Positions 13,696 to 62,054 of a stretch of DNA of 64,000 nucleotides are shown here, one piece after another (position 1 is the first letter of the stretch; each line of letters begins with the position of its first letter). The notes under the pieces are model-generated. The model was not told the DNA's origin. It did not search any database and saw only the letters and a list, made by a program, of their open reading frames with translations. Source of the stretch: Macrostomum lignano (taxonomy: Eukaryota); contig NIVC01003722.1 of NCBI GenBank assembly GCA_002269645.1, forward strand, positions 16,578-80,577, in the 5' to 3' direction. Position numbers and translations under genes: made by a program.

Positions 13696-13864
<169 letters not shown>

Positions 13865-14661: not shown

Positions 14662-17521
14662 CTAATACGTTGGACACCAGCTAGAAGCGTTCTTGACCGC
14701 GGTGACAAAAATCAGCAGCAAGACGGCCACAGAGCAGCTGACGGAGCAGATTATCAGCAGGCGGTCAATCGCTGAGCCAATCTGCTGCCACTCGGATCCC
14801 GGACTGGTTTTGATTGTTGTCATGGAAACCGACTCGAGCGATTGGGCTTGGTTGCTCTCCTTGCAGTTCTCAACGCTTTGCTGCAAAAATTGTGCGACAG
14901 TTGCTAACTGCATCCGAGTGAGTTATTAAAGACTCAGAACTTTATGCTCACCACAGTGTTCTTCCAGCCGCACAGGCGGTTGAGGAACAGCAGCCTCAGC
15001 ACTGGGCTGCTCACAGCCTCCCGCGATGCAGCTCTCCTGTAGCACAGGTGCACAACTATGCTGCCGATTGTGCTCAGAGCGGTCACAGCCATGGCCACCG
15101 TGAAGTACCAGGCTGGGGATGGGCAGAGACAGACTTGGCTCAGTGTAGCTGCATAGCACAGCACAGCACAGCACAGCACAGCACAATACAGCACAGCACA
15201 GCACAGCACAGCACAGCACAATACAGCACAGTACAGCACAGCACAGCACAGCACAGCACAGCACAGCACAACACAGCACAGCACAGCACAGCACAGCACA
15301 GCACAGCACAGCACAGCACACATCAATAGCCATACACTCTGACTCACTGAGCACTGGAACAGACTCGCTCTGAGCAGGGGTGATGCTGCCCGCCAGCTGC
15401 AGGAACACACTCATTGACAGCAGGATGGCCACATTCAGTGCCAGTCGGTCGCCCGAGTCCGCTGGCAGGAGAAAGCCGAAGATGCAGGTGGCGAGGATGA
15501 GGGCGCTGGGGATGATGAGCACGATGACGTAGTAGAGGGGCCGCCTCTGCAAAGGGATGGGGAGCGGGAGACTGAGCGGGCACTTAATGCCGAGCCTCGG
15601 GGACCTTTATATACGAGTATCTAGTTTCTATCTCACCTTGAAGCTGACAGTGATATTCACTATGTCGTGTTGTCCCATCTTACTATTCCAGGATGTATTG
15701 ACATTGGTGACGCAGAATTCATTATTTTGGCTAGCAGTCACGACAATCTGCTGGTCATTGGGTCTTGGTAAAGCCTTCAGCCTGATGTATTTACTACCCT
15801 TCGCTACTGAGGACAGGTAGATTGAGCAGTGCTGGGAGTCGAACGGGAAATCGTTCAGCTTCATCTTGCACTTGTTGGTTGTGCCGTAGGACAGCAGTGC
15901 CGTGACCTGGCCATTCGCGAGCACCTTCGCTAGCAGCCTGTTCTTCTCGAAGCTGCGAATGTCGATGCTATGAGAGAGGTTGAGTAGCTTTTAAGTGAGT
16001 TGGTGTCAAAAGTGCAATAATCATCGTATACTTTTTTATAAGCTTTAGTGAATCATATTTGAGTTAGTAGCCAGCCAAAGATCATGAAAGATACATCGCT
16101 TCATATCTTTTTACTTATCATTATAAGTAAAGTACCAGTCAGAGGTTTGAATTATAAGCCGCAAAAACACCAAATATTTCTAATACTGAATACCACGGAC
16201 AACTAAAGCAACGTACAGGACGCGACACTGTACGAGCTAAATCTATACAAAATGTTTTGAAGGCCACTGTTCGCCGAGAAATACACTATGTAGATAGAAA
16301 GTTTTCATTTTTTCAGCTCAAAAATTGTTATTGCTTTCAATAGGAGGCAGACCCAATGCTCATCTTTGAGTTGTCCTTGGCTTACTGTGTAACAATATGT
16401 GTAACAGAAATGATAAAATAGATGCATACGAGCTAAAACTAAAGATTCGAGCCGTGCCATGCATTTTAATGATTTTTTAGGTACAGGAAATGTACGTAGA
16501 ATATGAAATTAACATAGAATCCCAATTTTCCGAACAAAGAGCTTTACGAATATCAATAGAGATCTTATCCAAAGATGAGCATTGCGTCTGCCTCCTATCG
16601 AAAGCAATAACAATTTTTATGCTGAAAAAAGAGAACTTCCTATCTCCGTAGTTCTACCATGTCCTTCTACTTTAGTAGTCCTTGCTGAATACTACTTTCG
16701 ATTGTTGGCAATTCAGTAGTATCGACTAATTTTGAATCAATTTTTATCAGGAGCGAATCTGGTGATTGGCCAGTTGTGCCGTCTGAACGGATTTTGCAAT
16801 GGTTCGCTCCTTCATCCAACGTGGAGCTGTGGGATTTCGAGGAGTTTGAGACGCGATCCCGGACGAGAAGAGAAGATAAGAGCAACTTTTGCACTTGAGC
16901 TATGGAGCTAATAAACTGAAATCTGATGTCGCACTCACGGCCTCATCACAATGACATCCGGCACCCAAATCATGTCGAGTGGCAGGAAGATTTCGTCAGT
17001 TGTCAGCAGCTCAGCATTGCCCGACCTGTCCCAGGCCAGTCTCCTGTCAGTCCATTGCTTGGGGGCGGAAGAGTTACAAAGGTTTTTTTCAGCATGAATG
17101 TAACATCAATATTTCTAATAACTCATCAAGCTTACCAGCATTATGTAGCTGTCAAGAGAAAACAACTGCTTCACATCATTCTGGAACAGCACAAGATGGA
17201 GCATCGTTATCGGACAGGGGTTAATTGAATTAGCGCTAGCGCTACATCACTATTTTTGGACATCTATGGTATTTACTGGTGCCAACTCACCACTTCAAGC
17301 AGCTCGTTGACAAGGCAGTCCACAGTAACCAAGGTAGCGGTGCCATTGTCCTGCGGCGGAGCCGCCTCCTTGCAGTACCTGGCGGTCAGGTTCAGCCATC
17401 GGATCACCTGCTCCTCTCCAGATGCCGCTTCTTCTGTTTGAGAATGCACTCCTGATGACAGCAAGACGAGCACTGCTACGCAGAGTCTGCAGCAGAGGTC
17501 TGAGTATTGTTGAGTCCGCAT
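14662..17521 (-). CDS. Divergent nAChR-like Cys-loop ligand-gated ion channel subunit, copy A (443 aa, non-alpha type)
   Basis: Seven exons: 17521-17291, 17180-17136 (the 45-bp exon typical of nAChR genes), 17057-16939 (WTDRRLAW...WVPD), 15967-15637 (Cys-loop CKMKLNDFPFDSQHC), 15546-15348 (M1-M2, SGDRLALNVAILLSMSVF), 15112-14952 (M3), 14907-14662 (EW..I...IDRL, M4). Total 1332 nt in frame, all GT-AG. Confidence 0.9.
15153..15321. repeat. (CAGCA)n microsatellite in intron 5 of channel copy A
   Basis: Pentamer run read directly. Confidence 0.95.
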
Positions 17522-19187
17522 CGATCTATTCGGGTAGGAGCGCAGGCTCACACAGCAGTATTTGCCAAGTATCACAGCGCCAGACTGCTAGCAGTTCACC
17601 AAACTAAGTAAGCAGAGCATGAACTGATGTAGACAAGCCTCTTATATATACATACTAGAGCAAATGCAGCCTTTTGCTATAACCAATAAGCTGATTGCGA
17701 TTGCTGAGCTGAGTGAATGCGACGCTGATAAAGCAGTTGGTGGCATATTGGCCTGCCGTTTCCCCGACTCACTTTGCTCAGCGACTGCAAGGCTTTAATT
17801 AACAGTCACGACAGTTAAACCAAGCACTGAGCAGAGCACACAAAGGGCCGGGTTAGCATGGTGCTCAAATATTGAATTAGTAGAAGCTATCGCTGGGAAG
17901 CTTCAGAGTTGAATTTGTTTAAGCTGTGAGCAAGCGAAGTGACCATGGCAACATTTTTCGAGAAAGTGAACTTTCCGGTGCCCTTGCAGTTCACTGCCTA
18001 ACGGATGAGAAAGTCAGGGCCGCTGTACACCCAGTGTGAGCGAGTGCGTAATCCGTATATGTACTTGGCAGCGGCCAAGGTACTCAACTTGAAGCAGACT
18101 AGAGTAAGTTCAGCTGCGCGCCACTTCAATTCGGCGACTCAAACTTTAATTAATGAGAGTCCGTGCAGCTTATCAACTTTCGTGCTGTCGTCCGTCAGAC
18201 ACATGGGTTTGATTCCGAGAAGAACAGTTAGTTTTCTGAGTTGCTTCAACTATTGGATATTGTTCAGAGTTGCCTAATTAGATTCTATTAACTCGGCTCT
18301 CTTCGTCACTGATGCACCGAATCAATTTGCTTAAGTGCTACTCAATTGTTTGCTTCCAGCCACCTAGCCAGTGCCCCGGCCGTATTGTCATGCAATTGTC
18401 CAATTTGTCAACTCTAGCTGTTCATCAAATATTATCCGTAAGAGTGCGTGACACTTACGGTGTGGTTTGTGACCGGTCGGATGTTCTTTCTCTCCGGCCT
18501 CCGTCGCGCCCCGTCTCCGTCTCTCTGGCGCACCCACCTCCCCCCGATCTGGCTTTAAGGCCTTCTTCTCGCGTTGATTTGCCTCCCCTTTGTCTGTTTG
18601 CAGGGACTGCTAAAAATAGCATCACTGTGGTGCCAGCTCTAGAAGTCCCTGGCGATCCCTTGTAGGTGTTCGCGTCTGGCTTCTTTCGTGCTCTGACTGT
18701 GGAGTTAATGAAACCATTTATACTTCCGGCTCAGTACCATCTTCATTTTAATAAGCTCCCGTCTCAAACTCACTGCACTTACATGTAATAGACACATGGA
18801 AAGCTAAACCTTGACTATATCAGTATCGTAAGATCTAATCGAATGAGGAATTCTGAAGCTAATGTTTTTCACTAATATAGGTACAAGTAAAACCCACGAT
18901 GCCCTCAACTCCGGAGGTAATTACATCAGTCCGAAAGATTCAGTCTTCAGTTGTCTTGAAACAAGTGCAATGCGTCAAAATGATTATTATAGTTTAACAA
19001 GATAAAATATAGTTGTAATATATATCTGCTGCGGCAGTTTGGTTAACTGGCCTATTGGTTCAATAATTAGCTGCTAGTGTTGGCTGCTGGAGTATTGCAC
19101 GGTACACAGCTGATGTGTTAGTTTATTAAGGAGTTAGTTTAGTAGGCCTTAAACTCGAATTGATGAGCTCGGTCATCAGCATCCCGC

Positions 19188-22100
19188 CTAGTTGCTCTTG
19201 TTAGCGGTGGCGCCCAGCAGCACGGTGACGGCCACGGAGAGGCTCACAACGCAGACCAGCATCAGTCTGTCCAGCACGCAGCTCACATGCAGCCACTCGT
19301 CTCCAGGATCGCGGCAGCCGTCCTGGACGCTGGCGAGGCTGCTGCTGGATGATGAGGCGGCCGCGGCCTTCGATGTGGCGCTGCTGACTCGGTAATTCTG
19401 GCGAAAAATGAGAGCAATTTAAAGATTCGACAAGCTGTCAGCAGATAAAGTAAGAGCAACGTCGGAAAATCTAAGTACATATGAGAGAGCACGCACCGAC
19501 CAGCCGCACAGGCGGTTGAGGAACAACAGCCTCAGCACTGGGCTGCTCACAGCCTCCCGCGATGCAGCTCTCCTGTAGCACAGGTGCACAACTATGCTGC
19601 CGATTGTGCTCAGAGCGGTCACAGCCATGGCCACCGTGAAGTACCAGGCTGGGGATGGGCAGAGACAGGCTTGGCTCAGTGTAGCTGCACAACACAGCAC
19701 AGCACAGTACACCACAGCATAGCACAGCACAGCACAGCATAGCACAGCACAGCACAGCACAGCACAGCACAGCACAGCACAGCACAGCACAGCACAGCAC
19801 AGCACAGCACAGCACAGCACACAGCCCAGCACAGCACAGCACAGCACAGCACAACACAGCACAGCACAGCACAGCACAGCACAGCACAGCACAATACAGC
19901 ACAGCACAGCACAGCACAGCACAGCACAGCACAGCACAATACAGCACAGCACAGCACAGCACAGCACAGCACAGTACAGTACAGCACAATACAGCACAGC
20001 ACAGCACAGCACAGCACAGCACAGCACAGCACAGCACAGCACAGCACAGCACAACACAGCCCAGCACAGCACAGCACAGCACAGCACAACACAGCACAGC
20101 ACAGCACAGCACAGCACAGCACAGCACAATACAGCACAGCACAGCACAGCACAGCACAGCACAGCACAGCACAATACAGCACAGCACAGCACAGCACAGC
20201 ACAGCACAGTACAGTACAGCACAATACAGCACAGCACAGCACAGCACAGCACAGCACAGTACAGCACAGTACAGTACAGCACAGCACACATCAATAGCCA
20301 TACACTCTGACTCACTGAGCACGGGAACGGACTCGCTCTGAGCAGGAGTGATGCTGCCCGCCAGCTGCAGGAACACACTCATTGACAGCAGGATGGCCAC
20401 ATTCAGTGCCAGTCGGTCGCCCGAGTCCGCTGGTAGGAGAAAGCCGAAGATGCAGGTGGCGAGGATGAGGGCGCTGGGGATGATGAGCACGATGATGTAG
20501 TAGAGGGGCCGCCTCTGCAATGGGATGGGGAGCGGGAGGCTGAGCGGGTAGTCAGAACAGAGACTGCTGTGCAATGAGTGAGTACCCAGCACCTCTCAAA
20601 CATGCGGTATCTTACCTCGAATTCAACTGTAACCAAAAGCTTCTTGAATTGGGGAAATTGGGTGCTGAAGTCAATAATGACTGAGCGCACACTAGTAACA
20701 CAGTACTCATTGTTCTGCAGGTTTATCTCGCTGTAGTTGATAGGCAGCCCACTTTTTATCTCAAGCTGCAAAAGCGTCTGCTTCTTCGCCGCTGACGAGA
20801 AAGAAAACTGGCAAACTTGCGTGTCAAATGGAAAGTCGCGCATCTTCAGCGGGCACTTGATGGTTATGCCGAGCGGCGTTTCCAGTTTCATCCTACCGTT
20901 CGAGCTCACGTCAACCAAGAATTTGTTGGTTTCAAAGCTTTTGACGTCAACCCTGTCAAAATATTTACGAGAGTATTTGATAAAAGACTGGGCTGTCTAT
21001 GGCCGAGTGCAGTTCTGTGGCAGTGGCTTTGGTTGGCTTCATTGTCTATGGCCGAGTGCAGCTCTGTGGCAGTGGCTTTGGTTGGCTTTATTGTCAATGG
21101 CCGAGTGCAGTTCTGTGGCAGTGGCTTTGGTTGGCTTCATTGTCTATGGCCGAGTGCAGTTCTGTGGCAGTGGCTTTGGTTGGCTTCATTGTCTATGGCC
21201 GAGTGCAGCTCTGTGGCAGTGGCTTTGGTTGGCTTCATTGTCTATGGCCGAGTGCAGCTCTGTGGCAGTGGCTTTGGTTGGCTTTATTGTCAATGGCCGA
21301 GTGCAGTTCTGTGGCAGTGGCTTTGGTTGGCTTTATTGTCTATGGCCGAGTGCAGCTCTGTGGCAGTGGCTTTGGTTGGCTTTATTGTCTATGGCCGAGT
21401 GCAGCTCTGTGGCAGTGGCTTTGGTTGGCTTTATTGTCTATGGCCGAGTGCAGCTCTGTGGCAGTGGCTTTGGTTGGCTTTATTGTCTATGGCCGAGTGC
21501 AGCTCTGTGGCAGTGGCTTTGATAGGCTTTATTGTCTATGGCCGAGTGCAGTTCTGTGGCAGTGGCTTTGGTTGGCTTTATTGTCTATGGCCGAGTGCAG
21601 TTCTGTGGCAGTGGCTTTGGTTGGCTTTATTGTCTATGGCCGAGTGCAGCTCTGTGGCAGTGGCTTTGGTTGGCTTTATTGTCTATGGCCGAGTGCAGTT
21701 CTGTGGCAGTGACTTTGGTTGGCTTTATTGTCTATGGCCGAGTGCAGTTCTGTGGCAGTGGCTTTGGTTGGCTTTATTGTCTATGGCCGAGTGCAGCTCT
21801 GTGGCAGTGGCTTTGGTTGGCTTTATTGTCTATGGCCGAGTGCAGCTCTGTGGCAGTGGCTTTGATAGGCTTTTTTGATAGGCTGCAGCGAAAGGGGACT
21901 CTCCACCTGATCGGCTTTATTATCAACCAATATAAAAATCAATGCCATATTAAATTGGCAAACAGAACTCACGGATGGCTCAGACTCAAGTCCGGAAGCC
22001 ACACATAGTCTGTTGGTAGAAAGATCTTCTCAAACTTGGCCAGTTTGGGATCGTCGGTCTCGTTCCAGGCGAGTCGCAAATCCGTCCAAAACTGAAAATT

Positions 22101-22613
22101 CAGAGTTGTTCGAGGGCGGCCGAGGCAGGTGTTGCGGTAGATGTGCAGCTGCTACTCATTCAGGTAACTTAAAGGTGGATTATCTAGGAGTCAAACTCAC
22201 CATCATTATCCAGAGATCCAAGGACACTAGCTGATTCACAACATCCTACAAAGCGTTTTTTCAGGCTGATTTAACTGCTTTTAAACCGATTACAGTGGCT
22301 ATCGCATTTTTGAGTAAAAGTTTGAGCAAAAACCTGTAAGTTTGGGGAGTTAAAATAAGATATACAATACTGCACCCTCAGTGGCACTCACCACGCTGCT
22401 GATTCTGATGAGTTTAGTTCTAAACTTGATTACATTGGCCGTGCCGTTGTCTGGCGGAGGTGCCGCCACCTTGTAGTAGCCGGAGGTGATGTTCAGCAGC
22501 CGGATGATCCTCTCTTCGGTTGACATCCTGGAAGGCTCCTTCGCCGAGCAGACGGCGGCCTGGAGGACCAGCAACGTCAATGTCAACGCCAGAATAATCC
22601 CCTGTCTCAGCAT
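19188..22613 (-). CDS. Divergent nAChR-like Cys-loop channel subunit, copy B (427 aa)
   Basis: Exons 22613-22392, 22245-22201, 22091-21973, 20952-20616 (CPLKMRDFPFDTQVC), 20514-20316, 19648-19497, 19397-19188 (EWLHVSCVLDRL). Total 1284 nt in frame. Confidence 0.9.
19686..20289. repeat. (CAGCA)n microsatellite in intron 5 of channel copy B
   Basis: About 600-bp pentamer run. Confidence 0.95.
20993..21870. repeat. 49-bp minisatellite in intron 3 of copy B
   Basis: Unit TCTATGGCCGAGTGCAGCTCTGTGGCAGTGGCTTTGGTTGGCTTTATTG. Confidence 0.93.
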
Positions 22614-23084: not shown

Positions 23085-23320
23085 TGTGTTTTTTTGGTTA
23101 AAAAGCACATCGGTAACAGAACGGGAGGTTAAAAAGCACATTGGTAACAGAACGGGAGGTTAAAAAGTACATTGGTAACAGAACGGGAGGTTAAAAAGCA
23201 CATCGGTAACAGAACTGGAGGTTAAAACAGACACATTGGTAACAGAACGGGAGGTTAAAAAGCACATTGGTAACAGAACGGGAGGTTAAAAAGCACATTG
23301 GTAACAGAACGGGAGGTTGA
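23085..23320. repeat. 31-bp minisatellite (AAAAAGCACATTGGTAACAGAACGGGAGGTT)n
   Basis: Unit read directly. Confidence 0.88.
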
Positions 23321-23474
23321 GCTTGGGACACCTACACCTACACAAGGGACACCTTGGGACAACTGCGAAGGGACACAATATTATTACTATACAAGTGAGT
23401 CGATAAATTATTGTTTAAATTACGACTCGAATGACAGCTGCTCTCACAATATTTGAATTAATAAATAGCTATTG

Positions 23475-24120
23475 ACTCATTGGTACACAGCCATTGGCTC
23501 ATTGGTACATAGACAAAAGTTCTTTGGTACACAGCCATTGGCTCATTGGTACACAGACAAATAGTTCTTTGGTACACAGTCATTGGCTCATTAATATACA
23601 GACAAAAGTTCTTTGGTACACAGCCATTGGCTCATTAATATACAGACAAAAGTTCTTTGGTACACAGCCATTGGCTCATTGGTACACAGACAAAAGTTCT
23701 TTGGTACACAGTAATTGGCTCATTGGTACACAGACAAAAGTTCTTTGGTACACAGTAATTGGCTCATTGGTACACAGACAAATAGTTCTTTGGTACACAG
23801 CCATTGGCTCATTGGTACACAGTTATTGGCTCATTGGCACACACTTATTGGCTCATTGGTACACAGACAAATAGTTCTTTGGTACACAGCCATTGGCTCA
23901 TTGGTACACAGTTATTGGCTCATTGGTACACAGTTATTGGCTCATTGGTACACAGACAAATAGTTCTTTGGTACACAGCCATTGGCTCATTGGTACACAG
24001 TTATTGGCTCATTGGCACACACTTATTGGCTCATTGGTACACAGACAAAAAGTTCTTTGGTACACAGCCATTGGCTCATTGGTACACAGCCATTGGCTCA
24101 TTGGTACACAGTTATTGGCT
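23475..24120. repeat. Compound minisatellite (TTGGCTCATTGGTACACAG core)
   Basis: Repeated core with variable tails. Confidence 0.88.
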
Positions 24121-24206
24121 CGTTTAAAAACAGTTATAATTTTATGATGCCATTCAGATGATTTTGCTAGTGTGTCACGTTTAGTAAGAGGTCGGTGTCA
24201 AATCCA

Positions 24207-27200
24207 TCAGCAAGCTACAAAGCCGCTATTAGCAGCTGTGACGAAAAGCAGCCCGCCAACAGCTGCAGCGGACAGGACAGCGCAGGCAATCAGCAGCCGG
24301 TCCACTGCAGAGCCGATGTGACGCCACGCATCCGCGGGGTCGCTGCCTTGAAAACCGCACAGGCGGTTGAGGAACAGCAGCCTCAGCACTGGGCTGCTCA
24401 CAGCCTCCCGCGATGCAGCTCTCCTGTAGCACAGGTGCACAACTATGCTGCCGATTGTGCTCAGAGCGGTCACAGCCATGGCCACCGTAAAGTACCAGGC
24501 TGGGGATGGGCAGAGACAGGCTTGGCTCAGTGTAGCTGCACAGCACAGCACATTACAGCACAGCACAGCACAGCACAGCACAGCCCAGCACAACACAGCA
24601 CAGCACAGCACAGCACAGCGCAGCACAGCACAGCACAGCACAGCACAGCACAGCACAGTACAGCACAGTACAGCACAGCACAGCACAGCACAGCACAGCA
24701 CAGCACAGCACAGCACAGCACAGCACAGCACAGCACAGCACAGCACAGCACAGCACACATCAATAGCCATACACTCTGACTCACTGAGCACTGGAACGGA
24801 CTCGCTCTGAGCAGGAGTGATGCTGCCCGCCAGCTGCAGGAACACACTCATTGACAGCAGGATGGCCACATTCAGTGCCAGTCGGTCGCCCGAGTCCGCT
24901 GGCAGGAGAAAGCCGAAGATGCAGGTGGCGAGGATGAGGGCGCTGGGGATGATGAGCACGATGATGTAGTAGAGGGGCCGCCTCTGCAAAGGGGTGGGGT
25001 GCGGGAGGCTGAGCGGGCACTCAGCACAGAGACTGCTGTGCAATGGGGTGGGGAGCGGGAGGCTGAGCGGGCACTCAGCACAGAGACTGCTGTGCAATGG
25101 AGTGGGGAGTGGGAGGCTGAGCGGGCACTTAGCACAGAGACTGCTGTGCAATGGGGTGGGGAGCGGGAGGCTGAGCGGGCACTTAGCACAGAGACTGCTG
25201 TGCAATGGGGTGGGGAGTGAGAGGCTGAGTGATGCAGCTGGTAAAGCACAGATGTTCAACTCATCTGCTACTTGCCTTGAAGCTGATTGAAACCTGAACT
25301 TTTTCGTAATATTCATAGATAGATACTTTTGAAGTTTCGATGTGGCTGATGCAGAATTCGTTGCTCTCCTTGTTAAGATCGGCATAGGTTTTGTTTGCCT
25401 CCTGTCCCAATTCAAGCTGCAAATCCGCAGGCGTTTTCACAGCCGAGGAGAAGGTTGCGTTGCACTGCTGGGAGTCGAAGGGAAAATACGCCATGTTCAT
25501 CGGACACCTGCTGGTTACTCCGTATGGAATGCCGATTATTACAGTTCCACTTTGGTAGACAATAGACAAGTGTTTATTGGCCTCATAATTGCGGATTTCG
25601 ACTCTGCGTTGCAGGAGTAGGTATTGATCTGTGTTCGCCACAATGACAAGGCATTGCTTTTAAAGTTACATGATACATGCACATCTACATGATACATGCA
25701 CATCTACATGATACATGCACATCTACATGATACATGCAAAACTACATGATACATGCACATCTACGTGATACATGCACAGCTACATGATACACATCCGCAA
25801 CTACATGATACACATAAACAGTTACATGATACACATACGCAACTACCGGTACATGATACACATACACAGTTACATGATACACTTACACAACTACATGAAA
25901 CACATACAGAACTACATGTTACTCATACGAAACCCTAAAACACAACCACAGTTAGTTACATGATACACATATACAGTTAAATAATACACATACACAGCTA
26001 CATGATACACATACGCAACTACATGATACACATATACAGTTACATAATACACATACGCAACTAAATGATACACATACACAGTTACATGATACACATACGC
26101 AACTACATGATACACATAAACAGTTACATGATACACACACGCAACTACATGATAAACATATACAGTTACATGATGCATGAACTTACGGGTGGTCCACGGT
26201 CACATCGGGCAGCCACAGCCAATCAGTCGGCACGAAGATTTTCTCAACCTTGGCTAAGCTTTCATCGCTTGTGTCATTCCAGGCTAATCGGGCATCTGTC
26301 CATCTCTGAATAATTTTTTTTATTAATGGCACATTGCTATGCTCGTAACTGCATATGAGATTTGATTGAGCTGAGATGCATATGACATTTGGTTGACCTG
26401 AGATGCATATGACATTTGGTTGAGCTGAGATACATATGAGATTTGAATGAGCTGAGATGCATATGAGATTCGATTGAGCTGAGATACATATGAGATTTGA
26501 TTGAGACGAGATACCTATGAGATTTGATTGAGCTGAAATACCTATGAGATTTGATTGAGGTGAGATACCTATGAGAGTTGATTGAGGTGAGATACCTATG
26601 AGAGTTGATTGAGGTGAGATACCTATGAGAGTTGATTGAGGTGAGATACCTATGAGAGTTGATTGAGGTGAGATACCTATGAGATTTGATTGAGGTGAGA
26701 TACCTATGAGATTTGATTGAGGTGAGATACCTATGAGAGTTGATTGAGCTGAGATGCATATGAGATTTGGTTGACCTGAGGTGCATATGAGATTCGATTG
26801 AGCTGAGATGCATATGAGATTTGATTGAGGTGAGATACCTATGAGAGTTGATTGAGCTGAGATACCTATGAGAGTTGATTGAGGTGAGATACCTATGAGA
26901 TTTGATTGAGCTGGGGTGCACACACTGAGATGTAAACGATGGCTTACCAGTATCATCCAGAGGTCAATGGACACTTGCTGTTTCACAATATCCTGAATGG
27001 CAGCAGCAACAGCTTTATTACACAAAGGTAGAGTTGAGCACAAGATGCACAAGCTGCACTCACCACGCTGCTCAATCGAACAACTTTAATGGACACAATG
27101 ACAACATTCGCTGTGCCATTGTCTGGAGGCGGCGCCGCGCCCTTGCAGTAGCCGGAGGTGAGGTTCAGCAGCTCGACAATTCTCTCCTGGTTGGACTTCC

Positions 27201-27294
27201 TGGATTGCCCGGCCGAAGTCAGAACCCAAGCGAGCGCGAGCAGCATTTGCAGCAGGCCGGCTGCCCGGTGAGTCAGTGCTCGAGGAGGCTTCAT
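24207..27294 (-). CDS. Divergent nAChR-like Cys-loop channel subunit, copy C (404 aa, 6 exons)
   Basis: Exons 27294-27064, 26992-26948, 26305-26187, 25603-25276 (CPMNMAYFPFDSQQC; GC donor AAG|GCAAGT), 24983-24785, 24499-24207 (M3 and M4 in one exon). Total 1215 nt in frame. Confidence 0.87.
24538..24758. repeat. (CAGCA)n microsatellite in intron 5 of copy C
   Basis: Pentamer run. Confidence 0.95.
24995..25230. repeat. 54-bp tandem duplication (about 4 units) of the intron 4 acceptor region of copy C
   Basis: Unit GCTGAGCGGGCACTCAGCACAGAGACTGCTGTGCAATGGGGTGGGGAGCGGGAG. A single related unit lies in copy B intron 4. Confidence 0.88.
25660..26175. repeat. About 21-bp minisatellite (ACATGATACACATACGCAACT)n
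   Basis: Intron 3 of copy C. Confidence 0.88.
26350..26915. repeat. 27-bp minisatellite (GAGATTTGATTGAGGTGAGATACCTAT)n
   Basis: Intron 2 of copy C. Confidence 0.9.
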
Positions 27295-27555
27295 CAGCGA
27301 GGCTGGACTAATTCCGGGCTCCAGTGCTGCAGAATAAACTATTAATATTCATAGCCAGTTATCAGTTAGCAAGCAGTCAGACAGTTTGGCTCCATAAAAA
27401 ATTGCGCAAATACAGAGAGGGGGGGCTCATTTGATTTGGCTGATCAGCATCTGAGCTGGGCTTAAGTAATTAATCCAGCAGTTCTGTTTGCCGAATAATA
27501 ACAATGCTCAGACACGCACGCAAACATCCTGAGTTTGTTGACTTTAGACAGTTGG

Positions 27556-28078
27556 AATCATTAGCATCGTTAGCACCATTAGCACTATTAGCATCATTAG
27601 CACCATTAGCACTATTAGCATCATTAGCACCATTAGCATCATTAGCATCAATAGCATCATTAGCATCATTAGCATCATTAGCACCATTAGCACCATTAGC
27701 ACCATTAGCACTATTAGCATCATTAGCACCATTAGCACTATTAGCATCATTAGCACCATTAGCACTATTAGCATCATTAGCACCATTAGCATCATTAGCA
27801 TCGTTAGCACCATTAGCACCATTAGCACTATTAGCATCATTAGCATCAATAGCATCATTAGCATCATTAGCATCATTAGCACCATTAGCACCATTAGCAT
27901 CAATAGCACCATTAGCATTATTAGCATCATTAGCATCAATAGCATCATTAGCATCATTAGCATCATTAGCACCATTAGCACCATTAGCATCAATAGCATC
28001 ATTAGCATCATTAGCACCATTAGCACCATTAGCATCAATAGCATAATCAGCATAATCAGCATCATTAGCACCATTAGC
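27556..28078. repeat. 9-bp repeat (GCATCATTA/GCACCATTA)n
   Basis: Unit read directly. It explains the ANGAND / LASLAP / MLMLM ORFs. Confidence 0.93.
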
Positions 28079-28845
28079 ACTGGAAACCATTGACATGACA
28101 TGGCCACTAGTATTACTATAAACTAACATCAGCTCAGGTTTGTTAGTTTTACTTCTGCAATGTCGATCATAAATTTTGTAGGATGAGCAAAAATAACTCG
28201 ACCTCTGTGTCCGTTTGAAGCTCGTTGCAACTCAAAAGTCAATCGACATATTCTGGACACTCACCTGGCTGGCTCTACATCAACTGCGATCACGACAGCG
28301 ACAGCGCCTTTTTTAAGGGCCTTCCCATCAAGAAGCTGGAAGCGATCGATACTTTCATCTTCATCGTCCGTTTTTGTGATCGGCTCGTGACCTTCAACAC
28401 CGACATCACCGCCGTTTTCGGGATGGTCGGGCGTGTTAAATCCGGATGCTCATGCGGTCGGCGCTGCATCACAACATCCGATTCAGTGCCCAGGCAGTAC
28501 CAAATTCTCGCTAATCTCGTCTCGACCTGTGTCCGTTTGAAGCTCATTGAAACTCAAAAGTCTTCGCGCCTCAAGGTGTCAGCTGTTTGCGTTTCAAAGA
28601 TGGCTCTTTTTCGGGGCGATCGTTGCGATCGGAGCGGCTTTCCTTCTCAAGAGCCACTCTTGCGATCTTTGCGCACTTCCCTCTTCTCCCGATGTGTATG
28701 GCAAAATTCCAGTAGTTGAAAAGTTGTGGATTTAATGTTTAAAAAAACTGAAAACTTCAAATCTTGCCAATGCAGTTGGCAGCTGGAATCGGCCTGCAAC
28801 AAAATCCGCACGATTTGCGGCGGCCTTCTGCTTCATTTTTTTTAG

Positions 28846-29262
28846 GATTCGAACCTGAGACTATGATAAGGTGAGGTAAGCAGCATTCGAACCAAGGACC
28901 ATTATAGGATGCAATAAGCAGGATTCGAACCTAGGACAATTTTGGAACTCACTAAGTAGGATTCGAACCTAGGACTATTATAGGATCAACTATATGGATT
29001 CGAACCTAGGACTATTATAGGATCAACTATATGGATTCGAACCTAGGACTATTATAGGATCAACTATATGGATTCAAAACTAGGACTATTATAGGATCAA
29101 CTATACGGATTCGAACCTAGGACTATTATAAGATCAACTATATGGATTCGAACCTAGGACTATTATAGGATCAACTATATGGATTCGAACCTAGGACTAT
29201 TATAGGATCAACCATATGGATTCGAACCTAGGACCATTAAAGGACTCACTAAGATTCAAACC
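28846..29262 (-). repeat. 37-bp minisatellite carrying a Pol III B-box (GGTTCGAATCC on the minus strand) in most units
   Basis: Top-strand unit GGATTCGAACCTAGGACTATTATAGGATCAACTATAT; about 12 copies of the motif, most perfect. Confidence 0.85.
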
Positions 29263-29429
29263 TAAAACTACTGGGAGAGTTTATTTCCTATAGCATATCA
29301 GGAAAATTAATAAATATCCAGATAATATCGATGACAGAGGATTATTAGAAAGATGCAGCTTCATAGAACAGAGGAGCTCAGTAAGCAGGCGTCAGCGATC
29401 AGGCACGGTGTCCGATGATTGAGCCGGAA

Positions 29430-32400
29430 TCAGAATTCAGAAAATCTTATTTTTCTCAAAGCGGGCTCGCAGTCGCCGCTCCCCGCCGCGGTGAGAGCCA
29501 GACAGATCAGAATGCCAGCTGAAGCAACGATCGCGCCGAAGGCCAGCAGCCGATCGATGATGCGACCGATTTGACGCCACTCGGCAGTTTCCATGGAAGT
29601 CGTTGCTGGGGCGACGCTCGTTTGCTTGCCGACCTGGTCAGCCCAGGCGGAGTCGTCATCGGCCTGCTTTGGGGCGGAATGAAATGCTCAGGTGAAAATT
29701 TAGAGGCAGGCATGGGGCTCGAACTCAGGAGCTCCAGACAGAGTACACATCAGATTTAGGAAGTCAGAACCATTGCCATGTAAAAGTCCAGAATCTCTGC
29801 TAATTAATCTAAAATGCGCTAAATAACAAATTTACAAGCAGAACTCTTAGCTCGTCTCACCACAGTGTTCTTCCAGCCGCACAGGCGGTTGAGGAACAGC
29901 AGCCTCAGCACTGGGTTGCTCACAGCCTCCCGCGATGCAGCTCTCCTGTAGCACAGGTGCACAACTATGCTGCCGATTGTGCTCAGAGCGGTCACAGCCA
30001 TGGCCACCGTGAAGTACCAGGCTGGGGATGGGCAGAGACAGGCTTGACTCAGTGTAGCTGCATAGCACAGCACAGCACAGCACAGCACAGCACAGCACAG
30101 CACAGCACAGCACAGCACAGCACAATACAGCACAGCACAGCACAGCACAGCACAGCACAGCACAATACAGCACAGCACAGCACACCACAGCACAGCACAG
30201 CACAGCACTGCACACATCAATAGCCATACACTTGGACTCACTGAGCACTGGAACAGACTCGCTCTGAGCAGGAGTGATGCTGCCCGCCAGCTGCAGGAAC
30301 ACACTCATTGACAGCAGGATGGCCACATTCAGTGCCAGTCGGTCGCCCGAGTCCGCTGGCAGGAGAAAGCCGAAGATGCAGGTGGCGAGGATGAGGGCGC
30401 TGGGGATGATGAGCACTATGACGTAGTACATCGGCAGTCTCTGGAGTGTTGAGTGTAAATATTTGGCCAGAAATTGAAACAAAATATTTGCGTTATAACA
30501 ATGCAGTCGTCAGTCAACTAAAAGTCTGTACCTTAAAAGTAATGATAACCTCCATCTGGTGGTAACTAGAATAGACCCATTTCAGAATCGAGTCAACGGC
30601 AGTGACGCAGTACTCGTTGCTGCGGAGAAACCGAATCGATAGGTCAATAGCGATGCTTCGCACCACTCTGAGCCGCAGCGAATTGGGCGGTCTCTGGCCC
30701 GAGGCCATGCTGAAATTGCACTGCTGTTTGTCAAACGGAAAGCTGGCCAGCTGCATGTTGCATTTTTTTGTTAAGCCGAATGCCAGCTTGGTTTGCACCT
30801 GACCGTCTGAGCTGATCTCGGCTAGCAGTTTGCTCTGATCGTGGTTGCGAATCTCCACACTGGAAATGTTCAGGCTATGGTTGTGAAGTTCGGGCACAAG
30901 GAAAATAAGGATACTCGTAGAAGTGCAGGAGAGATAAGGATAGGAATACAGGTGAGATAAAAAAGGATAGGAATAAAGGTGAGATAAGGCTAGGAATACA
31001 GGTGAGATAAGGATAGGAATACAGGTGAGATAAGGCTAGGAATACAGGTGAGATAAGGATAGGAATACAGGTGAGATAAGGATAGGAATACAGGTGATAT
31101 AAGGCTAGGAATACAGGTGGGATAAGGATAGGAATACAGGTGAGATAAGGATAGGAATACAGGTGAGATAAGGCTAGGAATACAGGTGAGATAAAAAGGA
31201 TAGGAATAAAGGTGAGATAAGGCTAGGAATACAGGTGAGATAAGGATAGGAATACAGGTGAGATAAGGATAGGAATACAGGTGAGATATGGATAGGAATA
31301 CAGGTGAGATAAGGATAGGAATACAGGTGAGATAAGGATAGGTATACAGGTGAGATAAGGCTAGGAATACAGGTGAGATATGGATATAAATACAGGTGAG
31401 ATAAGGATAGGAATACAGGTGAGATAAGGATAGGAATACAGGTGAGATAAGGCTAGGAATACAGGTGAGATAAGGAGAGGAATACAGGTGAGATATGGAT
31501 AGGAATACAGGTGAGATAAGGAGAGGAATACAGGTGAGATAAGGATAGGAATACAGGTGAGATAAGGATAGGTATACAGGTGAGATAAGGCTAGGAATAC
31601 AGGTGAGATATGGATATAAATACAGGTGAGATAAGGATAGGAATACAGGTGAGATAAGGATAGGAATACAGGCGAGATAAGGCTAGGAATACAGGTGAGA
31701 TAAGGAGAGGAATACAGGTGAGATATGGATAGGAATACAGGTGAGATAAGGCTAGGAATACAGGTGAGATAAGGAGAGGAATACAGGTGAGATATGGATA
31801 GGAATACAGGTGAGATAAGGATAGGAATACAGGTGAGATAAGGATAGGTATACAGGTGAGATAAGGCTAGGAATACAGGTGAGATATGGATATAAATACA
31901 GGTGAGATAAGGATAGGAATACAGGTGAGATAAGGATAGGAATACAGGCGAGATAAGGCTAGGAATACAGGTGAGATAAGGAGAGGAATACAGGTGAGAT
32001 ATGGATAGGAATACAGGTGAGATAAGGCTAGGAATACAGGTGAGATAAGGAGAGGAATACAGGTGAGATATGGATAGGAATACAGGTGAGATAAGGATAG
32101 GAATACAGGTGAGATAAGGATAGGTATACAGGTGAGATAAGGCTAGGAATACAGGTGAGATATGGATATAAATACAGGTGAGATAAGGATAGGAATACAG
32201 ATGAGAAAAGGATATAGGAACACTCGGAAATAAAGATACGAGTAGAAACACAAAAATTAGTATTGAATAAGAAGTCAATAAAGAATCCCAGCCGTGCGAT
32301 GTGTGAAAGTTGATGGCATAAATTACAAGCGGCACCCACCAATGTCTGACACAGTCTCCAAAGTGGATTTAATTATAAGCCGCACCATTTTAAAGTAAAG

Positions 32401-34403
32401 TGTCTTTAAAGTGTCTGTCAAGCCGCATGGGTGGTCAAATATTGCTAATGGATGCCCAGAGCCTGTCAGTTTTAGACACCATTCGGAGCAAATAGATAAG
32501 TAGGATAGTTATCAAACTCACGGCTGGCTAACGCTGATGTCAGGTGTCCACAGCCAATCCAGAGGCGCGTAGATGGCGCCAACTGCGGCCAGTTCCGGTC
32601 TGGCGATTCCTTTCCAGGCTAGTCGGGGGTCTGTCCAGTTCTGTTGTATTGACATCAGTGTGGCAGAAATGATTGATGAGTCAACACGTTGGCTTTGGAG
32701 TGAGGCTGCGGGTTGGAAGGTTGTCCCAAGGTTGATGCAAATAGATCGATGAGGAAGGTGTATGCTTGTATGTGTGCTTGGAAGTAACGAGAAGGCTGTG
32801 TTTGGGAAGTGAGGCTGGCATGGGAGTCAGGGGGAGAGGGTGGTATGAGAGTCAGGGGTGAGCTTTGTGGCATAAGAGTCAGGGGGAGAGGGTGGTATGA
32901 GAGTCAGGGGTGAGCTTTGTGGCATAAGAGTCAGGGGGAGAGGGTGGTATGAGAGTCAGGGGTGAGGTTTGTGGCATAAGAGTCAGGGGGAGAGGGTGGT
33001 ATGAGAGTCAGGGGTGAGGTTTGTGGCATAAGAGTCAGGGGGAGAGGGTGGTATGAGAGTCAGGGGTGAGGTTTGTGGCATAAGAGTCAGGGGGAGAGGG
33101 TGGTATGAGAGTCAGGGGTGAGGTTTGTGGCATAAGAGTCAGGGGGAGAGGGTGGTATGAGAGTCAGGGGTGAGGTTTGTGGCATAAGAGTCAGGGGGAG
33201 AGGGTGGTATGAGAGTCAGGGGTGAGGTTTGTGGCATGAGAGTCAGGGGTGAGGTTTGTGGCATGAGAGTCAGGGGATGAGGCTTGTGGCATGAGAGTCA
33301 GGGGTGAGGCTTGTAGCATGAGAGTCAGGGAGTGAGGCTTGTGGCATGAGAGTCAGGGATTGTGAGGGTGGCATAAGAGTCAGGGGTGAGGGTGGCATGA
33401 GAGTCAGGGATTGTGAGGGTGGCATGAGAGTCAGGGATTGTGAGGGTGGCATGAGAGTCAGGGATTGTGAGGGTGGCATGAGAGTCAGGGGGTGAGGTGG
33501 CATGAGAGTCAGGGATTGTGAGGGTGGCATGAGAGTCAGGGGGTGAGGTGGCATGAGAGTCAGGGGTGAGGGTGGCATGAGAGTCAGGGATTGTGAGGGT
33601 GGCACGAGAGTCAGGGGTGAGGGTGGCATGAGAGTCAGAGAGTGAGGTGGCATGAGAGTCAGGGGTGAGGGTGGCATGAGAGTCAGGGGTGAGGGTGGCA
33701 CGAGAGTCATGGGTGGTGGTTGGCATGAGAGTCAGAGAGTGAGGTGGCATGAGAGTCAGGGGTGAGGGTGGCACGAGAGTCATGGGTGGTGGTTGGCATG
33801 AGAGTCAGGGGTGAGGGTGGCATGAGAGTCAGGGGTGAGGGTGGCACGAGAGTCATGGGTGGTGGTTGGCATGAGAGTCAGAGAGTGAGGTGGCATGAGA
33901 GTCAGGGGTGAGGGTGGCACGAGAGTCATGGGTGGTGGTTGGCATGAAAGTCAGGGGTGAGGGTGGCATGAGAGTCAGGGGTGAGGGTGGCACGAGAGTC
34001 ATGGGTGGTGGTTGGCATGAGAGTCAGAGAGTGAGGTGGCATGAGAGTCAGTGCATGTTTAACAGACTGCTTACCATGGAAACTCTGTTCTCCAGCACAA
34101 TGAACTGCTTGACCATGTCCTGTAAAGAGCACAAATAAATTAACAAATGAGAATGCGATGATTTAGCGCAAATCCGGACAAACCGGCTCTACTTACGACA
34201 TCAATGAGCTTGACTATCTCAATCATGATGGTCACAACGACGGCCGTGCCATTGATCGGTCTCGGACTGGCGCCTTTGACATAGCCGCCGTTGGTGAGAT
34301 TCAGCATCCGGATGATCTGCTCATCGACAGACGCGTCATCGGCGACAGGTTCCGCCGCATTGGTTGCTAGGAGCAGCTGTGCTAAAATCCCTGCCAGTAG
34401 CAT
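29430..34403 (-). CDS. Divergent nAChR-like Cys-loop channel subunit, copy D (about 430 aa)
   Basis: Exons 34403-34197, 34119-34075, 32640-32522, 30859-30532 (CNMQLASFPFDKQQC), 30440-30242, 30021-29861, 29663-29430 (AEWRQIGRIIDRL). Total 1293 nt in frame. Confidence 0.9.
30061..30208. repeat. (CAGCA)n microsatellite in intron 5 of copy D
   Basis: Pentamer run. Confidence 0.95.
30930..32205. repeat. 23-bp minisatellite (AGGATAGGAATACAGGTGAGATA)n
   Basis: Intron 3 of copy D. Confidence 0.93.
32815..34050. repeat. G-rich minisatellite of about 24 bp (GAGAGTCAGGGGTGAGGGTGGCAT)n
   Basis: Intron 2 of copy D. The same family occurs at 39385-39775. Confidence 0.9.
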
Positions 34404-61931: not shown

Positions 61932-62054
61932 CTGCATCGGTATAAAAAAGCCAACAGTTAATTAAGCAACTCTATTTGTACCTCGATATAGACTAGCCTC
62001 GCTGACTTAAAAATCATCCGGGTGCTAAATTTTACTCGGATGAGCATTAAACAG

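What the first reader, a model, noticed from the sequence alone, without database searches (positions are those of the whole stretch)
14662..34403. Four tandem Cys-loop channel genes with a near-identical pore module but strongly diverged ligand-binding domains
Seen: exon 5 (M1-M2), the non-repeat flanks of intron 5 and exon 6 (M3) are almost identical in DNA across copies A-D. By eye A and B differ at 5 of 199 nt in exon 5, and A and C at 3. Intron text such as CACATCAATAGCCATACACT and GGGCAGAGACAG(A/G)CTTGGCTCAGTGTAGCTGCA is shared too. Exon 4 of the extracellular domain shares only roughly one third of residues, and the M4 exons also differ. The tract ends sharply after AACCGCCTGTGCGG in exon 6 and, in copy D, starts about 15 nt inside exon 5. 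Inference: ongoing gene conversion keeps a constant pore/assembly module while the sensor domains diversify. Matching synonymous and intronic sites argue against protein-level selection alone.
Basis: partly seen in the sequence, partly recalled or inferred. Interest (0 to 1): 0.9.

Follow-up and report, generated by a model that had tools for sequence, protein, structure and literature searches.

The report
Gene conversion homogenises channel pore exons
Four neighbouring ion-channel genes of the flatworm Macrostomum lignano are old, strongly diverged duplicates, except for a 0.6-1.1 kb stretch encoding the pore helices M1-M3, which has been copied among them by gene conversion; this is a very clean example of a known process, region-restricted concerted evolution.

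Summary
The window carries exactly four intact, same-strand (minus) pentameric ligand-gated ion channel (Cys-loop) genes of Macrostomum lignano. I rebuilt all four gene models: seven exons each, including a 45-nt microexon, and six exons in copy C.

Outside one block the copies are saturated: ECD dS is 1.4 to more than 3, dN 0.43-0.62, and 4-fold sites are 35-48% identical. Inside the block, module dS is 0.03-0.09 and 4-fold sites are 94-98% identical. The block runs from the last ~35-60 nt of intron 4 through exon 5 and intron 5 with its (TGTGC)n microsatellite to the first 143-166 nt of exon 6. The 73 nt of unique intron-5 flank differ at 0-4 sites per pair.

Each copy keeps private substitutions and its own microsatellite length, and the tract ends differ between pairs. 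This excludes assembly collapse and protein-level selection alone, and it requires several non-allelic gene-conversion events.

Not shown: that conversion is still ongoing, or that it is selected to keep a common pore or assembly module. A self-sustaining island of homology explains the data equally well.

The kind is known, with regional conversion in fish protocadherin clusters as the closest analogue. I found no report of it for this channel family. Interest is moderate.

The parts
14662..17521 (-). Gene A: complete 7-exon pLGIC gene (434 aa)
   Evidence: Exons (high-low): 17521-17291, 17180-17136 (45-nt microexon), 17057-16939, 15967-15637, 15546-15348, 15112-14952, 14880-14662. All introns are GT-AG and the ORF is intact. 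It is identical to UniProt M. lignano model P0001 except for the microexon that model skips.
19188..22613 (-). Gene B: complete 7-exon pLGIC gene (427 aa)
   Evidence: Exons: 22613-22392, 22245-22201, 22091-21973, 20952-20616, 20514-20316, 19648-19497, 19397-19188. Exons 1-4, including the microexon, are reproduced exactly by the separately deposited UniProt model P0031.
24207..27294 (-). Gene C: complete 6-exon pLGIC gene (404 aa); GC donor in intron 4; no intron 6
   Evidence: Exons: 27294-27064, 26992-26948, 26305-26187, 25603-25276 (donor AAG|gcaagt), 24983-24785, 24499-24207 (exon 6 fused to M4).
29430..34403 (-). Gene D: complete 7-exon pLGIC gene (431 aa)
   Evidence: Exons: 34403-34197, 34119-34075, 32640-32522, 30859-30532, 30440-30242, 30021-29861, 29666-29430. 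P0005 equals the exon 4-5 translation of D.
14947..15584 (-). Homogenised tract in A: last ~38 nt of intron 4, exon 5, intron 5, exon 6 and the first bases of intron 6
   Evidence: blastn: 95% to D (14947-15549), 90% with gaps to C (14968-15584), 93-95% to B. Site-by-site list.
19500..20576 (-). Homogenised tract in B
   Evidence: blastn: 95% to A, C and D. Homology between B and C reaches 62 nt into intron 4.
24355..25045 (-). Homogenised tract in C
   Evidence: blastn. The 3' end lies at ...CTGTGCGG (24355), where C also lacks the intron and about 27 codons found in the other copies.
29856..30428 (-). Homogenised tract in D; identity starts at nt 13 of exon 5
   Evidence: Intron 4 of D is unrelated to that of A, B and C (30-34 differences in 45 nt).
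15151..15320 (-). (TGTGC)n microsatellite in intron 5 of A, 34 units
   Evidence: TRF. It lies in the middle of the tract.
19687..20288 (-). (TGTGC)n microsatellite in intron 5 of B, 120 units
   Evidence: TRF.
24538..24757 (-). (TGTGC)n microsatellite in intron 5 of C, 44 units
   Evidence: TRF.
30060..30214 (-). (TGTGC)n microsatellite in intron 5 of D, 31 units
   Evidence: TRF.
24985..25229 (-). 54-nt minisatellite (4.5 units) made of copies of the intron-4 acceptor region, abutting the 5' edge of the tract in C
   Evidence: TRF; the repeat finder family D15. B carries about one unit.

Best explanation
These are four intact, tandem, same-orientation genes for orphan cation-type pentameric ligand-gated channel subunits of Macrostomum lignano. 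They are old duplicates: synonymous sites are saturated everywhere except in one block.

That block comprises the 3' end of intron 4, exon 5 (pre-M1 Arg, M1, M2), intron 5 with a (TGTGC)n microsatellite, and most of exon 6 (M3 plus the post-M3 helix). It measures about 405 unique nt, or 0.6-1.1 kb with the repeat. It has been overwritten repeatedly by non-allelic (interlocus) gene conversion among the four copies, so all four encode an essentially identical M1-M3 core (113-115 of 115 residues per pair). They keep different extracellular domains, M3-M4 loops and M4 helices.

Shown: the dS discontinuity, the intron identity, the pair-specific tract ends and the private substitutions.

Inferred: conversion persists here because two strongly constrained exons separated by a short intron form the only stretch still similar enough to pair. 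The tract stops where the flanks (introns 4 and 6, exon 4, the loop) are no longer homologous, so the island sustains itself. The central microsatellite may add to break or initiation frequency. Divergence of 1-3.5% inside the tract fits a steady state with a per-site conversion rate roughly 10-30 times the mutation rate. It also fits a few events some time ago.
For: Family and organism: Pfam LBD and memb domains. Best PDB matches are 5-HT3A and nAChR alpha7. There is a C-x13-C Cys-loop with the FPFD motif, and a GDR motif before M2. UniProt M. lignano models match copies A, B and D exactly.

Conversion evidence:
- Nei-Gojobori dS is 0.033-0.087 in the module against 1.4 to more than 3 in the ECD and 0.5-2.1 in M4. 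Fisher p is 1e-21 to 1e-27.
- 4-fold sites are 94-98% identical in the module against 35-48% in the ECD.
- The unique intron-5 flanks differ at 0-4 of 73 nt per pair, and about 35 nt of intron 4 is shared by A, B and C.
- Tract ends differ by pair. The B-C tract extends 62 nt into intron 4 and A's about 38 nt, while D's tract starts at exon-5 nt 13. At the 3' end, A and D run about 23 nt further than B and C.
- Of 13 variable sites in the core, 11 are private (A 2, B 3, C 1, D 5), and microsatellite lengths are 34, 120, 44 and 31 units.
- Module GC3 is 0.78-0.81 against 0.61-0.68 in the ECD, the direction expected from GC-biased conversion (PMC1852091).

Baseline for protein constraint alone: in other fused tandem pLGIC models of M. 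lignano, 36-42% identity in the Cys-loop exon goes with only 58-79% identity in the module.

The tract size fits published mean non-allelic conversion tracts of a few hundred bp, and paralogues are known to 'escape' conversion as they diverge (bioRxiv 10.1101/135152).
Against: A Sawyer/GENECONV-style permutation on polymorphic sites is weak: significant only for A-C and A-D, and not located in the module. All four copies are homogenised over the same stretch, which leaves few polymorphic sites there. This is a known blind spot of that test.

The topologies of the ECD and the module do not conflict; both favour (A,D)|(B,C).

No DNA from a second species or a second locus could be obtained. So the classic signature, paralogues within a species closer than orthologues between species, is untested. 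Timing and continuing activity are unknown.

The 3' end of the tract in C coincides with the loss of intron 6 and about 27 codons. It may be a deletion junction rather than a conversion end.

The role of the microsatellite is only positional inference. Minisatellites are present in nearly every intron here.
Confidence: 0.88

Rival explanations
1. Adaptive concerted evolution: homogeneity of M1-M3 is itself selected. A common pore and gating core would let the four subunits co-assemble, or be swapped, without changing conductance, while the sensor domains diversify. Conversion is the mechanism and selection sets the boundaries.
For: The tract coincides with a structural unit: it starts at the pre-M1 Arg and ends just after the post-M3 helix that aligns to 5-HT3A 'WLRHLVLERIAW'. 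Module dN is 0-0.018, and only 4 amino-acid positions vary among the four copies. ECD dN is high at 0.43-0.62. Other M. lignano arrays of the family do not show such identity.
Against: The boundaries also coincide with the ends of the only alignable DNA, which the neutral model predicts without selection. There are no expression, co-assembly or polymorphism data. ECD dS is saturated, so diversifying selection cannot be tested. M4, which packs against M1 and M3, is not homogenised.
Confidence: 0.25
2. Purifying selection alone, on the protein and perhaps on codons, keeps the pore exons nearly identical. There is no DNA exchange.
For: M2 and its surroundings are the most conserved part of the wider M. 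lignano family. For example, PPECGERVSFS(I/V)TIVLSMCVFLQL is shared across other arrays.
Against: 4-fold degenerate sites are 94-98% identical in the module against 35-48% elsewhere. Unique intron sequence is 95-100% identical. The same microsatellite sits at the same place in all four copies. At comparable ECD divergence, other arrays reach only 58-79% amino-acid identity in the module.
Confidence: 0.02
3. Assembly or polishing artefact: one pore segment was wrongly propagated into four diverged genes, or paralogous reads homogenised the copies during polishing.
For: M. lignano is repeat-rich, and the tract contains a microsatellite that is hard to assemble. I could not inspect reads.
Against: All four tracts are distinct, with 11 private substitutions, four different microsatellite lengths and different tract ends. 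The flanks join seamlessly with correct splice sites and intact ORFs. UniProt gene models of M. lignano attach the same module to the A, B-like and D extracellular domains, including a second B-type locus, B' (P0002/P0155), with its own differences. Polishing cannot create 600 bp of identity from saturated sequence.
Confidence: 0.04
4. There was one sweep-like replacement rather than recurrent conversion: a single recent event or short burst spread one pore variant through the array, and the copies have simply diverged since.
For: All informative sites fit one tree, (A,D)|(B,C), with no four-gamete conflict inside the tract. Every copy has accumulated private changes, and no pair is identical.
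Against: The different 5' and 3' ends for different pairs need at least three separate events. The divergence level equals what a steady state would give with a conversion rate 10-30 times the mutation rate (inference). At the A,D|B,C diagnostic site of exon 5, the second B-type locus B' carries the A/D state, V instead of I. That hints at later shuffling.
Confidence: 0.2

Closest known systems
Regional gene conversion in clustered protocadherin genes of teleosts (fugu, zebrafish)
   Same: Both are tandem arrays of paralogues in which one part of the coding sequence is more than 95-99% identical at the nucleotide level, including synonymous sites, while the ligand- or recognition-determining part stays diverged. 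GC3 is raised in the converted part. The inference drawn is the same: repeated regional conversion rather than protein constraint (PMC1852091).
   Different: The gene family and phylum differ. Here the tract is much shorter (about 0.4 kb unique), spans an intron carrying a microsatellite, and lies in the middle of the gene, so both the N-terminal domain and the C-terminal M4 escape. Only four genes are involved.
Classical interlocus gene conversion between tandem duplicates, e.g. human fetal gamma-globin genes with a simple-sequence (TG)n stretch in IVS2 proposed as an initiation site (recalled from memory, Slightom et al. 1980; not retrieved here)
   Same: Both show a converted block with sharp ends inside otherwise diverged duplicates. 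Both include intron sequence, and a simple GT-rich repeat lies inside or at the edge of the tract.
   Different: There are four copies instead of two. The flanks are saturated rather than a few percent diverged. The hotspot role of the repeat is only a positional inference here.
Cationic pentameric ligand-gated channels (nAChR / 5-HT3 branch of the Cys-loop superfamily)
   Same: The domain architecture matches, as do the C-x13-C loop with FPFD, the pre-M1 Arg, 9' Leu, an acidic -1' residue (GDR), the 45-nt microexon and M1-M4. The best structural-sequence matches are 5-HT3A and alpha7 (1e-34 for the single sequence, 5.5e-48 for the profile).
   Different: Identity to any named receptor is only about 27-30%. 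The loop-B Trp used for cation-pi binding of ACh and 5-HT aligns to V/A/A/G. Loop C has no vicinal Cys pair. The M3-M4 loop is very short, about 27 aa shorter in C than in the other copies. The clade is a Macrostomum-specific expansion, and its ligand is unknown.
Variable-exon / constant-exon gene clusters (UGT1A, protocadherin constant exons)
   Same: The functional outcome is the same: many sensor or recognition domains are coupled to one common effector module.
   Different: In those clusters the constant part is physically shared through splicing. Here each gene owns its copy, and sameness is kept by DNA copying. The resemblance is in outcome only, not in mechanism.

Membership tests
Pentameric ligand-gated ion channel (Cys-loop receptor) superfamily | N-terminal ligand-binding domain followed by a 4-helix transmembrane domain | tested here: met
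   Pfam PF02931 2e-20 and PF02932 1.9e-18, both above the gathering cut-offs. The alignment to 5-HT3A runs from the ECD through M4.
Pentameric ligand-gated ion channel (Cys-loop receptor) superfamily | Signature disulphide loop C-x13-C with an FPFD-type motif | tested here: met
   A has CKMKLNDFPFDSQHC, and B, C and D have the equivalent. Both Cys residues and F-P-F-D are invariant in all four copies.
Cation-selective branch (nAChR / 5-HT3 / ZAC-like) | Acidic residue at M2 -1' (G-E/D-R/K) and no Pro-Ala-Arg anion motif; closest relatives are cationic receptors | tested here: met
   The motif SGDRLALNVAILLSMSVFLQL aligns to SGERVSFKITLLLGYSVFLII of 5-HT3A. The top PDB hits are all 5-HT3A or nAChR. 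Actual ion selectivity was not measured.
Acetylcholine- or serotonin-gated receptors (alpha-type agonist site) | Loop-B Trp, and for nAChR alpha subunits a vicinal Cys-Cys in loop C | tested here: not met
   The Trp of 5-HT3A (FTSW) and alpha7 (FGSW) aligns to SS-V/A/A/G. Loop C has no CC pair. These are therefore orphan receptors, not to be filed as nAChR or 5-HT3.
Interlocus (non-allelic) gene conversion / concerted evolution | Synonymous divergence sharply lower inside the tract than in the flanking coding sequence of the same genes | tested here: met
   dS is 0.03-0.09 against 1.4 to more than 3, with Fisher p at most 1e-21 for all six pairs.
Interlocus (non-allelic) gene conversion / concerted evolution | Non-coding sequence inside the tract is homogenised too | tested here: met
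   The intron-5 flanks differ at 0-4 of 73 nt per pair. The same microsatellite is present in all copies. The last ~35 nt of intron 4 is shared by A, B and C.
Interlocus (non-allelic) gene conversion / concerted evolution | Mosaic structure: tract end points differ between pairs of copies, implying multiple events | tested here: met
   (see parts). Caveat: the 3' end in C may be a deletion junction.
Interlocus (non-allelic) gene conversion / concerted evolution | Significant fragments in a GENECONV/Sawyer-type permutation, or conflicting tree topologies | tested here: inconclusive
   The permutation on polymorphic sites does not pick out the module, because all four copies are homogenised there. 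The quartet topology is the same, (A,D)|(B,C), in the ECD and the module.
Interlocus (non-allelic) gene conversion / concerted evolution | Paralogues within a species are more similar in the tract than orthologues between species | not testable with these tools
   No DNA or protein from another Macrostomum species, and no second M. lignano locus, could be retrieved.
Interlocus (non-allelic) gene conversion / concerted evolution | GC3 raised in the converted region (GC-biased conversion) | tested here: inconclusive
   GC3 is 0.78-0.81 against 0.61-0.68. The direction is right, but the four modules are effectively one sequence and TM codon usage differs anyway.

The most novel reading that the evidence does not exclude
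The array works as a 'variable sensor, constant pore' system maintained by selection. Conversion, perhaps seeded at the intronic (TGTGC)n repeat, is tolerated or favoured only across M1-M3, so that subunits with different orphan ligand-binding domains can co-assemble into channels with one fixed conduction and gating core. This would be a DNA-level counterpart of the variable/constant exon clusters, and a natural version of the ECD/TMD chimeras made in the laboratory.
Probability: 0.2. Interest if true: 0.65.

Novelty: new member of a known kind. Interest (0 to 1): 0.45.

Why it matters
This is a near-textbook natural experiment on the modularity of pentameric channels. Four different extracellular domains (30-47% identical by exon) and four different M4 and loop regions are coupled to one and the same M1-M3 core. 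That implies the ECD-TMD coupling interface tolerates wide ECD divergence.

For gene-family evolution, it is a compact case of a small island of homology kept alive by conversion inside otherwise saturated duplicates, with a microsatellite at its centre. It could be used to measure conversion rates and tract lengths in a flatworm.

In practice, trees or dS-based dating of this family must exclude exons 5-6. The public gene models of the locus also need correction.

It does not reveal a new mechanism. Regional conversion in tandem arrays is well documented (PMC1852091; bioRxiv 10.1101/135152). My literature searches found no report of it for Cys-loop receptors or for Macrostomum. That is absence of evidence within a limited library.

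Tried and rejected
- Sawyer/GENECONV-type permutation on polymorphic sites (after a time-out). It was uninformative because all copies are converted over the same stretch. I replaced it with synonymous-site contrasts.
- Separate trees. With four taxa, the ECD and the module give the same quartet, so there is no incongruence to exploit.
- A second locus or a second species:
  - The look-up of encoding contigs with P0001 found nothing on record.
  - A metagenome DNA scan with 50 nt of exon 5 gave 0 hits.
  - The word-indexed search with the module alone returned only a fragment of D.
  - A search with copy C found no C model and no other Macrostomum.
  - The full HMMER scan found only M. lignano paralogues, then lophotrochozoan nAChR-like proteins at 27-30%.
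- A fifth copy or pseudogene in the window: none found.
- The idea that the module is invariant across the whole family by constraint: rejected using other M. lignano arrays, which reach 58-79% identity.
- I tried to read nucleotide states of the second locus from frame-shifted UniProt models (P0002). It was too error-prone to use beyond one site.

Full report
**What is there.** A repeat search and a self-blastn of 10-40 kb show one DNA family present exactly four times, spaced about 4.5-5.5 kb apart (starts near 14.95, 19.5, 24.35 and 29.86 kb). The copies are 90-95% identical over 340-670 aligned nt. Apart from a 149-nt B-C match at 75% and two shorter matches of 54-60 nt at about 81-82%, nothing else aligns between the units. 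Many unrelated minisatellites surround them. Translation of the minus strand shows Cys-loop receptor exons. tblastn of the copy-A exons against all 64 kb finds four copies of every exon and no fifth copy or fragment. A joined translation hits Pfam Neur_chan_LBD (2e-20) and Neur_chan_memb (1.9e-18).

**Gene models.** I read the splice sites directly and rebuilt the models. A, B and D have seven exons. These include a 45-nt microexon, found in each copy as the only sensible AG-45 nt-GT open frame between exons 1 and 3. C has six exons: its exon 6 runs without an intron into the M4 coding part, and its intron 4 has a GC donor. All four ORFs are intact (434, 427, 404 and 431 aa), and every other intron is GT-AG. 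The genes span 14662-34403, matching the coordinates in the finding.

**Organism and family.** Copy A equals UniProt Macrostomum lignano model P0001 except that the model skips the microexon. P0031 reproduces exons 1-4 of B exactly, including the microexon. P0005 equals exons 4-5 of D. P0155 and P0002 describe a second B-type locus, B', with a few differences. A full HMMER scan of 1.84 billion representatives finds only M. lignano paralogues as near relatives. After those come lophotrochozoan nAChR-like proteins at 27-30% identity. The nearest named vertebrate proteins are alpha9-type nAChRs at about 30%. The best solved structures are 5-HT3A and nAChR alpha7.

The sequences carry the C-x13-C loop with FPFD, a pre-M1 Arg, 9' Leu and an acidic -1' residue (GDR). 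They therefore look like cation channels. The loop-B Trp of 5-HT3A and alpha7 aligns to V/A/A/G, loop C has no Cys pair, and the M3-M4 loop is very short. I class them as orphan cation-type pLGIC subunits of a Macrostomum-specific expansion.

**Checking the observation.** In a codon alignment, Nei-Gojobori estimates give the following:
- ECD (207 codons): dS 1.4 to more than 3 (saturated), dN 0.43-0.62.
- M4 region: dS 0.5-2.1.
- Exon 5 plus the shared part of exon 6 (114 codons): dS 0.033-0.087, dN 0-0.018.

Fisher tests of synonymous differences in the module against the ECD give p of 1e-21 to 1e-27 for all six pairs. 4-fold degenerate sites are 35-48% identical in the ECD and 94-98% identical in the module. 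In 20-codon windows, third-position identity jumps from 0.31-0.5 to 0.92-1.0 and falls back just as abruptly.

The non-repeat flanks of intron 5 (32 + 41 nt) differ at 0-4 positions per pair. A, B and C also share the last ~35 nt of intron 4. All four introns carry the same (TGTGC)n microsatellite, with 34, 120, 44 and 31 units.

**Tract ends.**
- 5' side: B-C homology runs 62 nt into intron 4 and into a 54-nt repeat unit. A's homology runs about 38 nt into intron 4. D's homology begins only at nt 13 of exon 5, and its intron 4 is unrelated.
- 3' side: C breaks after ...CTGTGCGG and B after GGCTGG. A and D stay identical for about 23 nt more, across the donor site.

Different ends for different pairs require several events. 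The break in C coincides with its missing intron 6 and about 27 missing codons, so it could be an in-frame deletion junction.

**Is it an artefact or plain constraint?** Within the core (about 405 unique nt) there are 13 variable sites. Eleven are private to one copy (A 2, B 3, C 1, D 5) and two split (A,D)|(B,C). Four distinct sequences with four repeat lengths and seamless, spliceable junctions to four different ECDs are not what a collapse or a polishing error produces. UniProt models attach the same module to the A, B' and D domains.

Constraint alone cannot explain identical introns and 4-fold sites. As a baseline for protein constraint, I compared other M. lignano models that fuse neighbouring pLGIC genes (P0006, P0007, P0154). 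There, 36-42% identity in the Cys-loop exon goes with only 58-79% identity in the M1-M3 module, not 97-100%.

**Weak or uninformative tests.** A Sawyer-type permutation on polymorphic sites does not single out the module. All four copies are homogenised over the same stretch, which leaves few polymorphic sites there. The longest identical runs (111-161 nt against at most 38 nt in permutations) are significant, but on their own they would not exclude constraint. The ECD dN distances and the two informative module sites support the same quartet, so separate trees differ in scale and not in shape. GC3 is higher in the module (0.78-0.81 against 0.61-0.68). This is the direction expected under GC-biased conversion (PMC1852091), but it amounts to a single observation.

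**Mechanism.** The best-supported reading is recurrent non-allelic gene conversion confined to exon 5, intron 5 and exon 6. I infer that the confinement is largely self-generated. M1-M2 and M3 are the slowest-evolving coding parts, and only 73 nt of unique intron separates them. Together they form the one block still similar enough to pair, and heteroduplex cannot extend into the non-homologous introns 4 and 6.

Published estimates for human duplicates give mean tracts of about 250 bp and a per-site conversion rate roughly ten times the mutation rate. Conversion slows as the copies diverge, until they 'escape' it (bioRxiv 10.1101/135152). By simple balance (inference), a conversion rate 10-30 times the mutation rate gives a few percent equilibrium divergence, which is what is seen. 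'Ongoing' is therefore compatible with the data but not demonstrated. A burst of events followed by divergence fits as well.

The microsatellite sits in the middle of the tract, about 230 nt from the 5' end and 185-210 nt from the 3' end, and may favour breaks. This is positional inference only, because almost every intron here has a minisatellite of its own.

Whether homogeneity is selected (a common pore for co-assembling subunits) is open. M4, which packs against M1 and M3, is not homogenised, and there are no expression or assembly data.

**Comparison and novelty.** The closest documented analogue is regional gene conversion in teleost protocadherin clusters. There, part of each variable exon is more than 99% identical among neighbours, including synonymous sites, while the recognition domains stay diverged (PMC1852091). 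Conversion between the gamma-globin duplicates, with a simple GT-rich repeat in the intron, is a second analogue, which I recall from memory. My searches found no report of domain-restricted conversion in Cys-loop receptor genes or in Macrostomum. I therefore rate this a new member of a known kind. It is real, unusually clean and useful, but not mechanistically surprising.

**Context in the window.** The rest of the window carries:
- a non-LTR retrotransposon (ORF2 with endonuclease, RT and RNase H domains, 41083-44814, minus strand);
- a Rab-like GTPase ORF (51328-52005);
- PIG-M exons (60062-61961);
- an ANAPC5-like exon (55423-56046);
- an integrase fragment (63070-63669).

Noticed in passing
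window 24207-24499 and 25270-25276 (copy C): Copy C has lost intron 6: exon 6 is fused in frame to the M4 exon, and the loop is about 27 aa shorter. Its intron 4 has a GC-AG splice (AAG|gcaagt). The homology break after CTGTGCGG may therefore be a deletion junction.
   Followed up: partly
window 24210-25436 (-): On the gene strand (TGTGC)n has no stop codon in any frame, and intron 5 of C is 285 nt (a multiple of 3). From within intron 4 through exon 5, intron 5 and the fused exon 6/7, C therefore reads as one continuous open frame (409 codons stop to stop). Intron retention would insert a Cys-rich (CAVLC)n peptide into the M2-M3 linker.
   Followed up: no
window 24985-25229; also 20515-20576: A 54-nt minisatellite (4.5 units in C, about one unit in B) is built from duplicated copies of the intron-4 acceptor region. 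It sits directly upstream of exon 5, at the 5' edge of the homogenised tract.
   Followed up: partly
window 20994-21877, 23096-23318, 23467-24121, 25667-26174, 26354-26913, 27557-28079, 28885-29244, 30926-32214, 32816-34051: Several long introns and all three intergenic spacers of the array carry their own private minisatellites (periods 49, 31, 22/44/89, 21, 27, 9, 37, 23 and 52 nt). The 52-nt family of D intron 2 recurs at 39383-39779 at 78-82% identity.
   Followed up: no
exon 1 of A-D, e.g. 22384-22532 vs 27056-27204: There is a local identity bump at codons 41-70 (IIRLLNLTSGY.K.AAPPPDNGTAN). Third-position identity is 0.54-0.64, and B and C are 75% identical over 149 nt. This may be an older, decayed conversion tract, or codon and motif constraint.
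   Followed up: no
copies A-D, residues after the Cys-loop (e.g. A 15790-15830): The loop-B Trp of 5-HT3A and alpha7 is replaced by V/A/A/G, and loop C lacks a Cys pair. The predicted agonist site is not of the ACh or 5-HT type, so the ligand is unknown.
   Followed up: partly
whole locus 14662-34403: The public UniProt models of this locus are faulty. P0001 skips the 45-nt microexon, P0002 and P0004 are frame-shifted or fused across neighbouring genes, and no model for copy C was found.
   Followed up: partly
window 41083-46007 (-): There is an apparently intact non-LTR retrotransposon. ORF2 is 1244 aa with Exo_endo_phos_2, RVT_1 and RNase_H domains. It is preceded by a 406-aa ORF with no Pfam hit, in a GC-rich stretch (56-60% GC).
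   Followed up: partly
window 51328-52005 (+), 55423-56046 (-), 60062-61961 (-), 63070-63669 (+): Neighbouring genes or fragments: a Rab-like small GTPase (Ras family, 2e-53), an ANAPC5-like exon, two PIG-M mannosyltransferase exons, and an rve integrase fragment below the Pfam cut-off.
   Followed up: partly
window 13683-13941: A long pure trinucleotide repeat, which translates as poly-Ser or poly-Val on the minus strand, lies just downstream of the 3' end of gene A.
   Followed up: no
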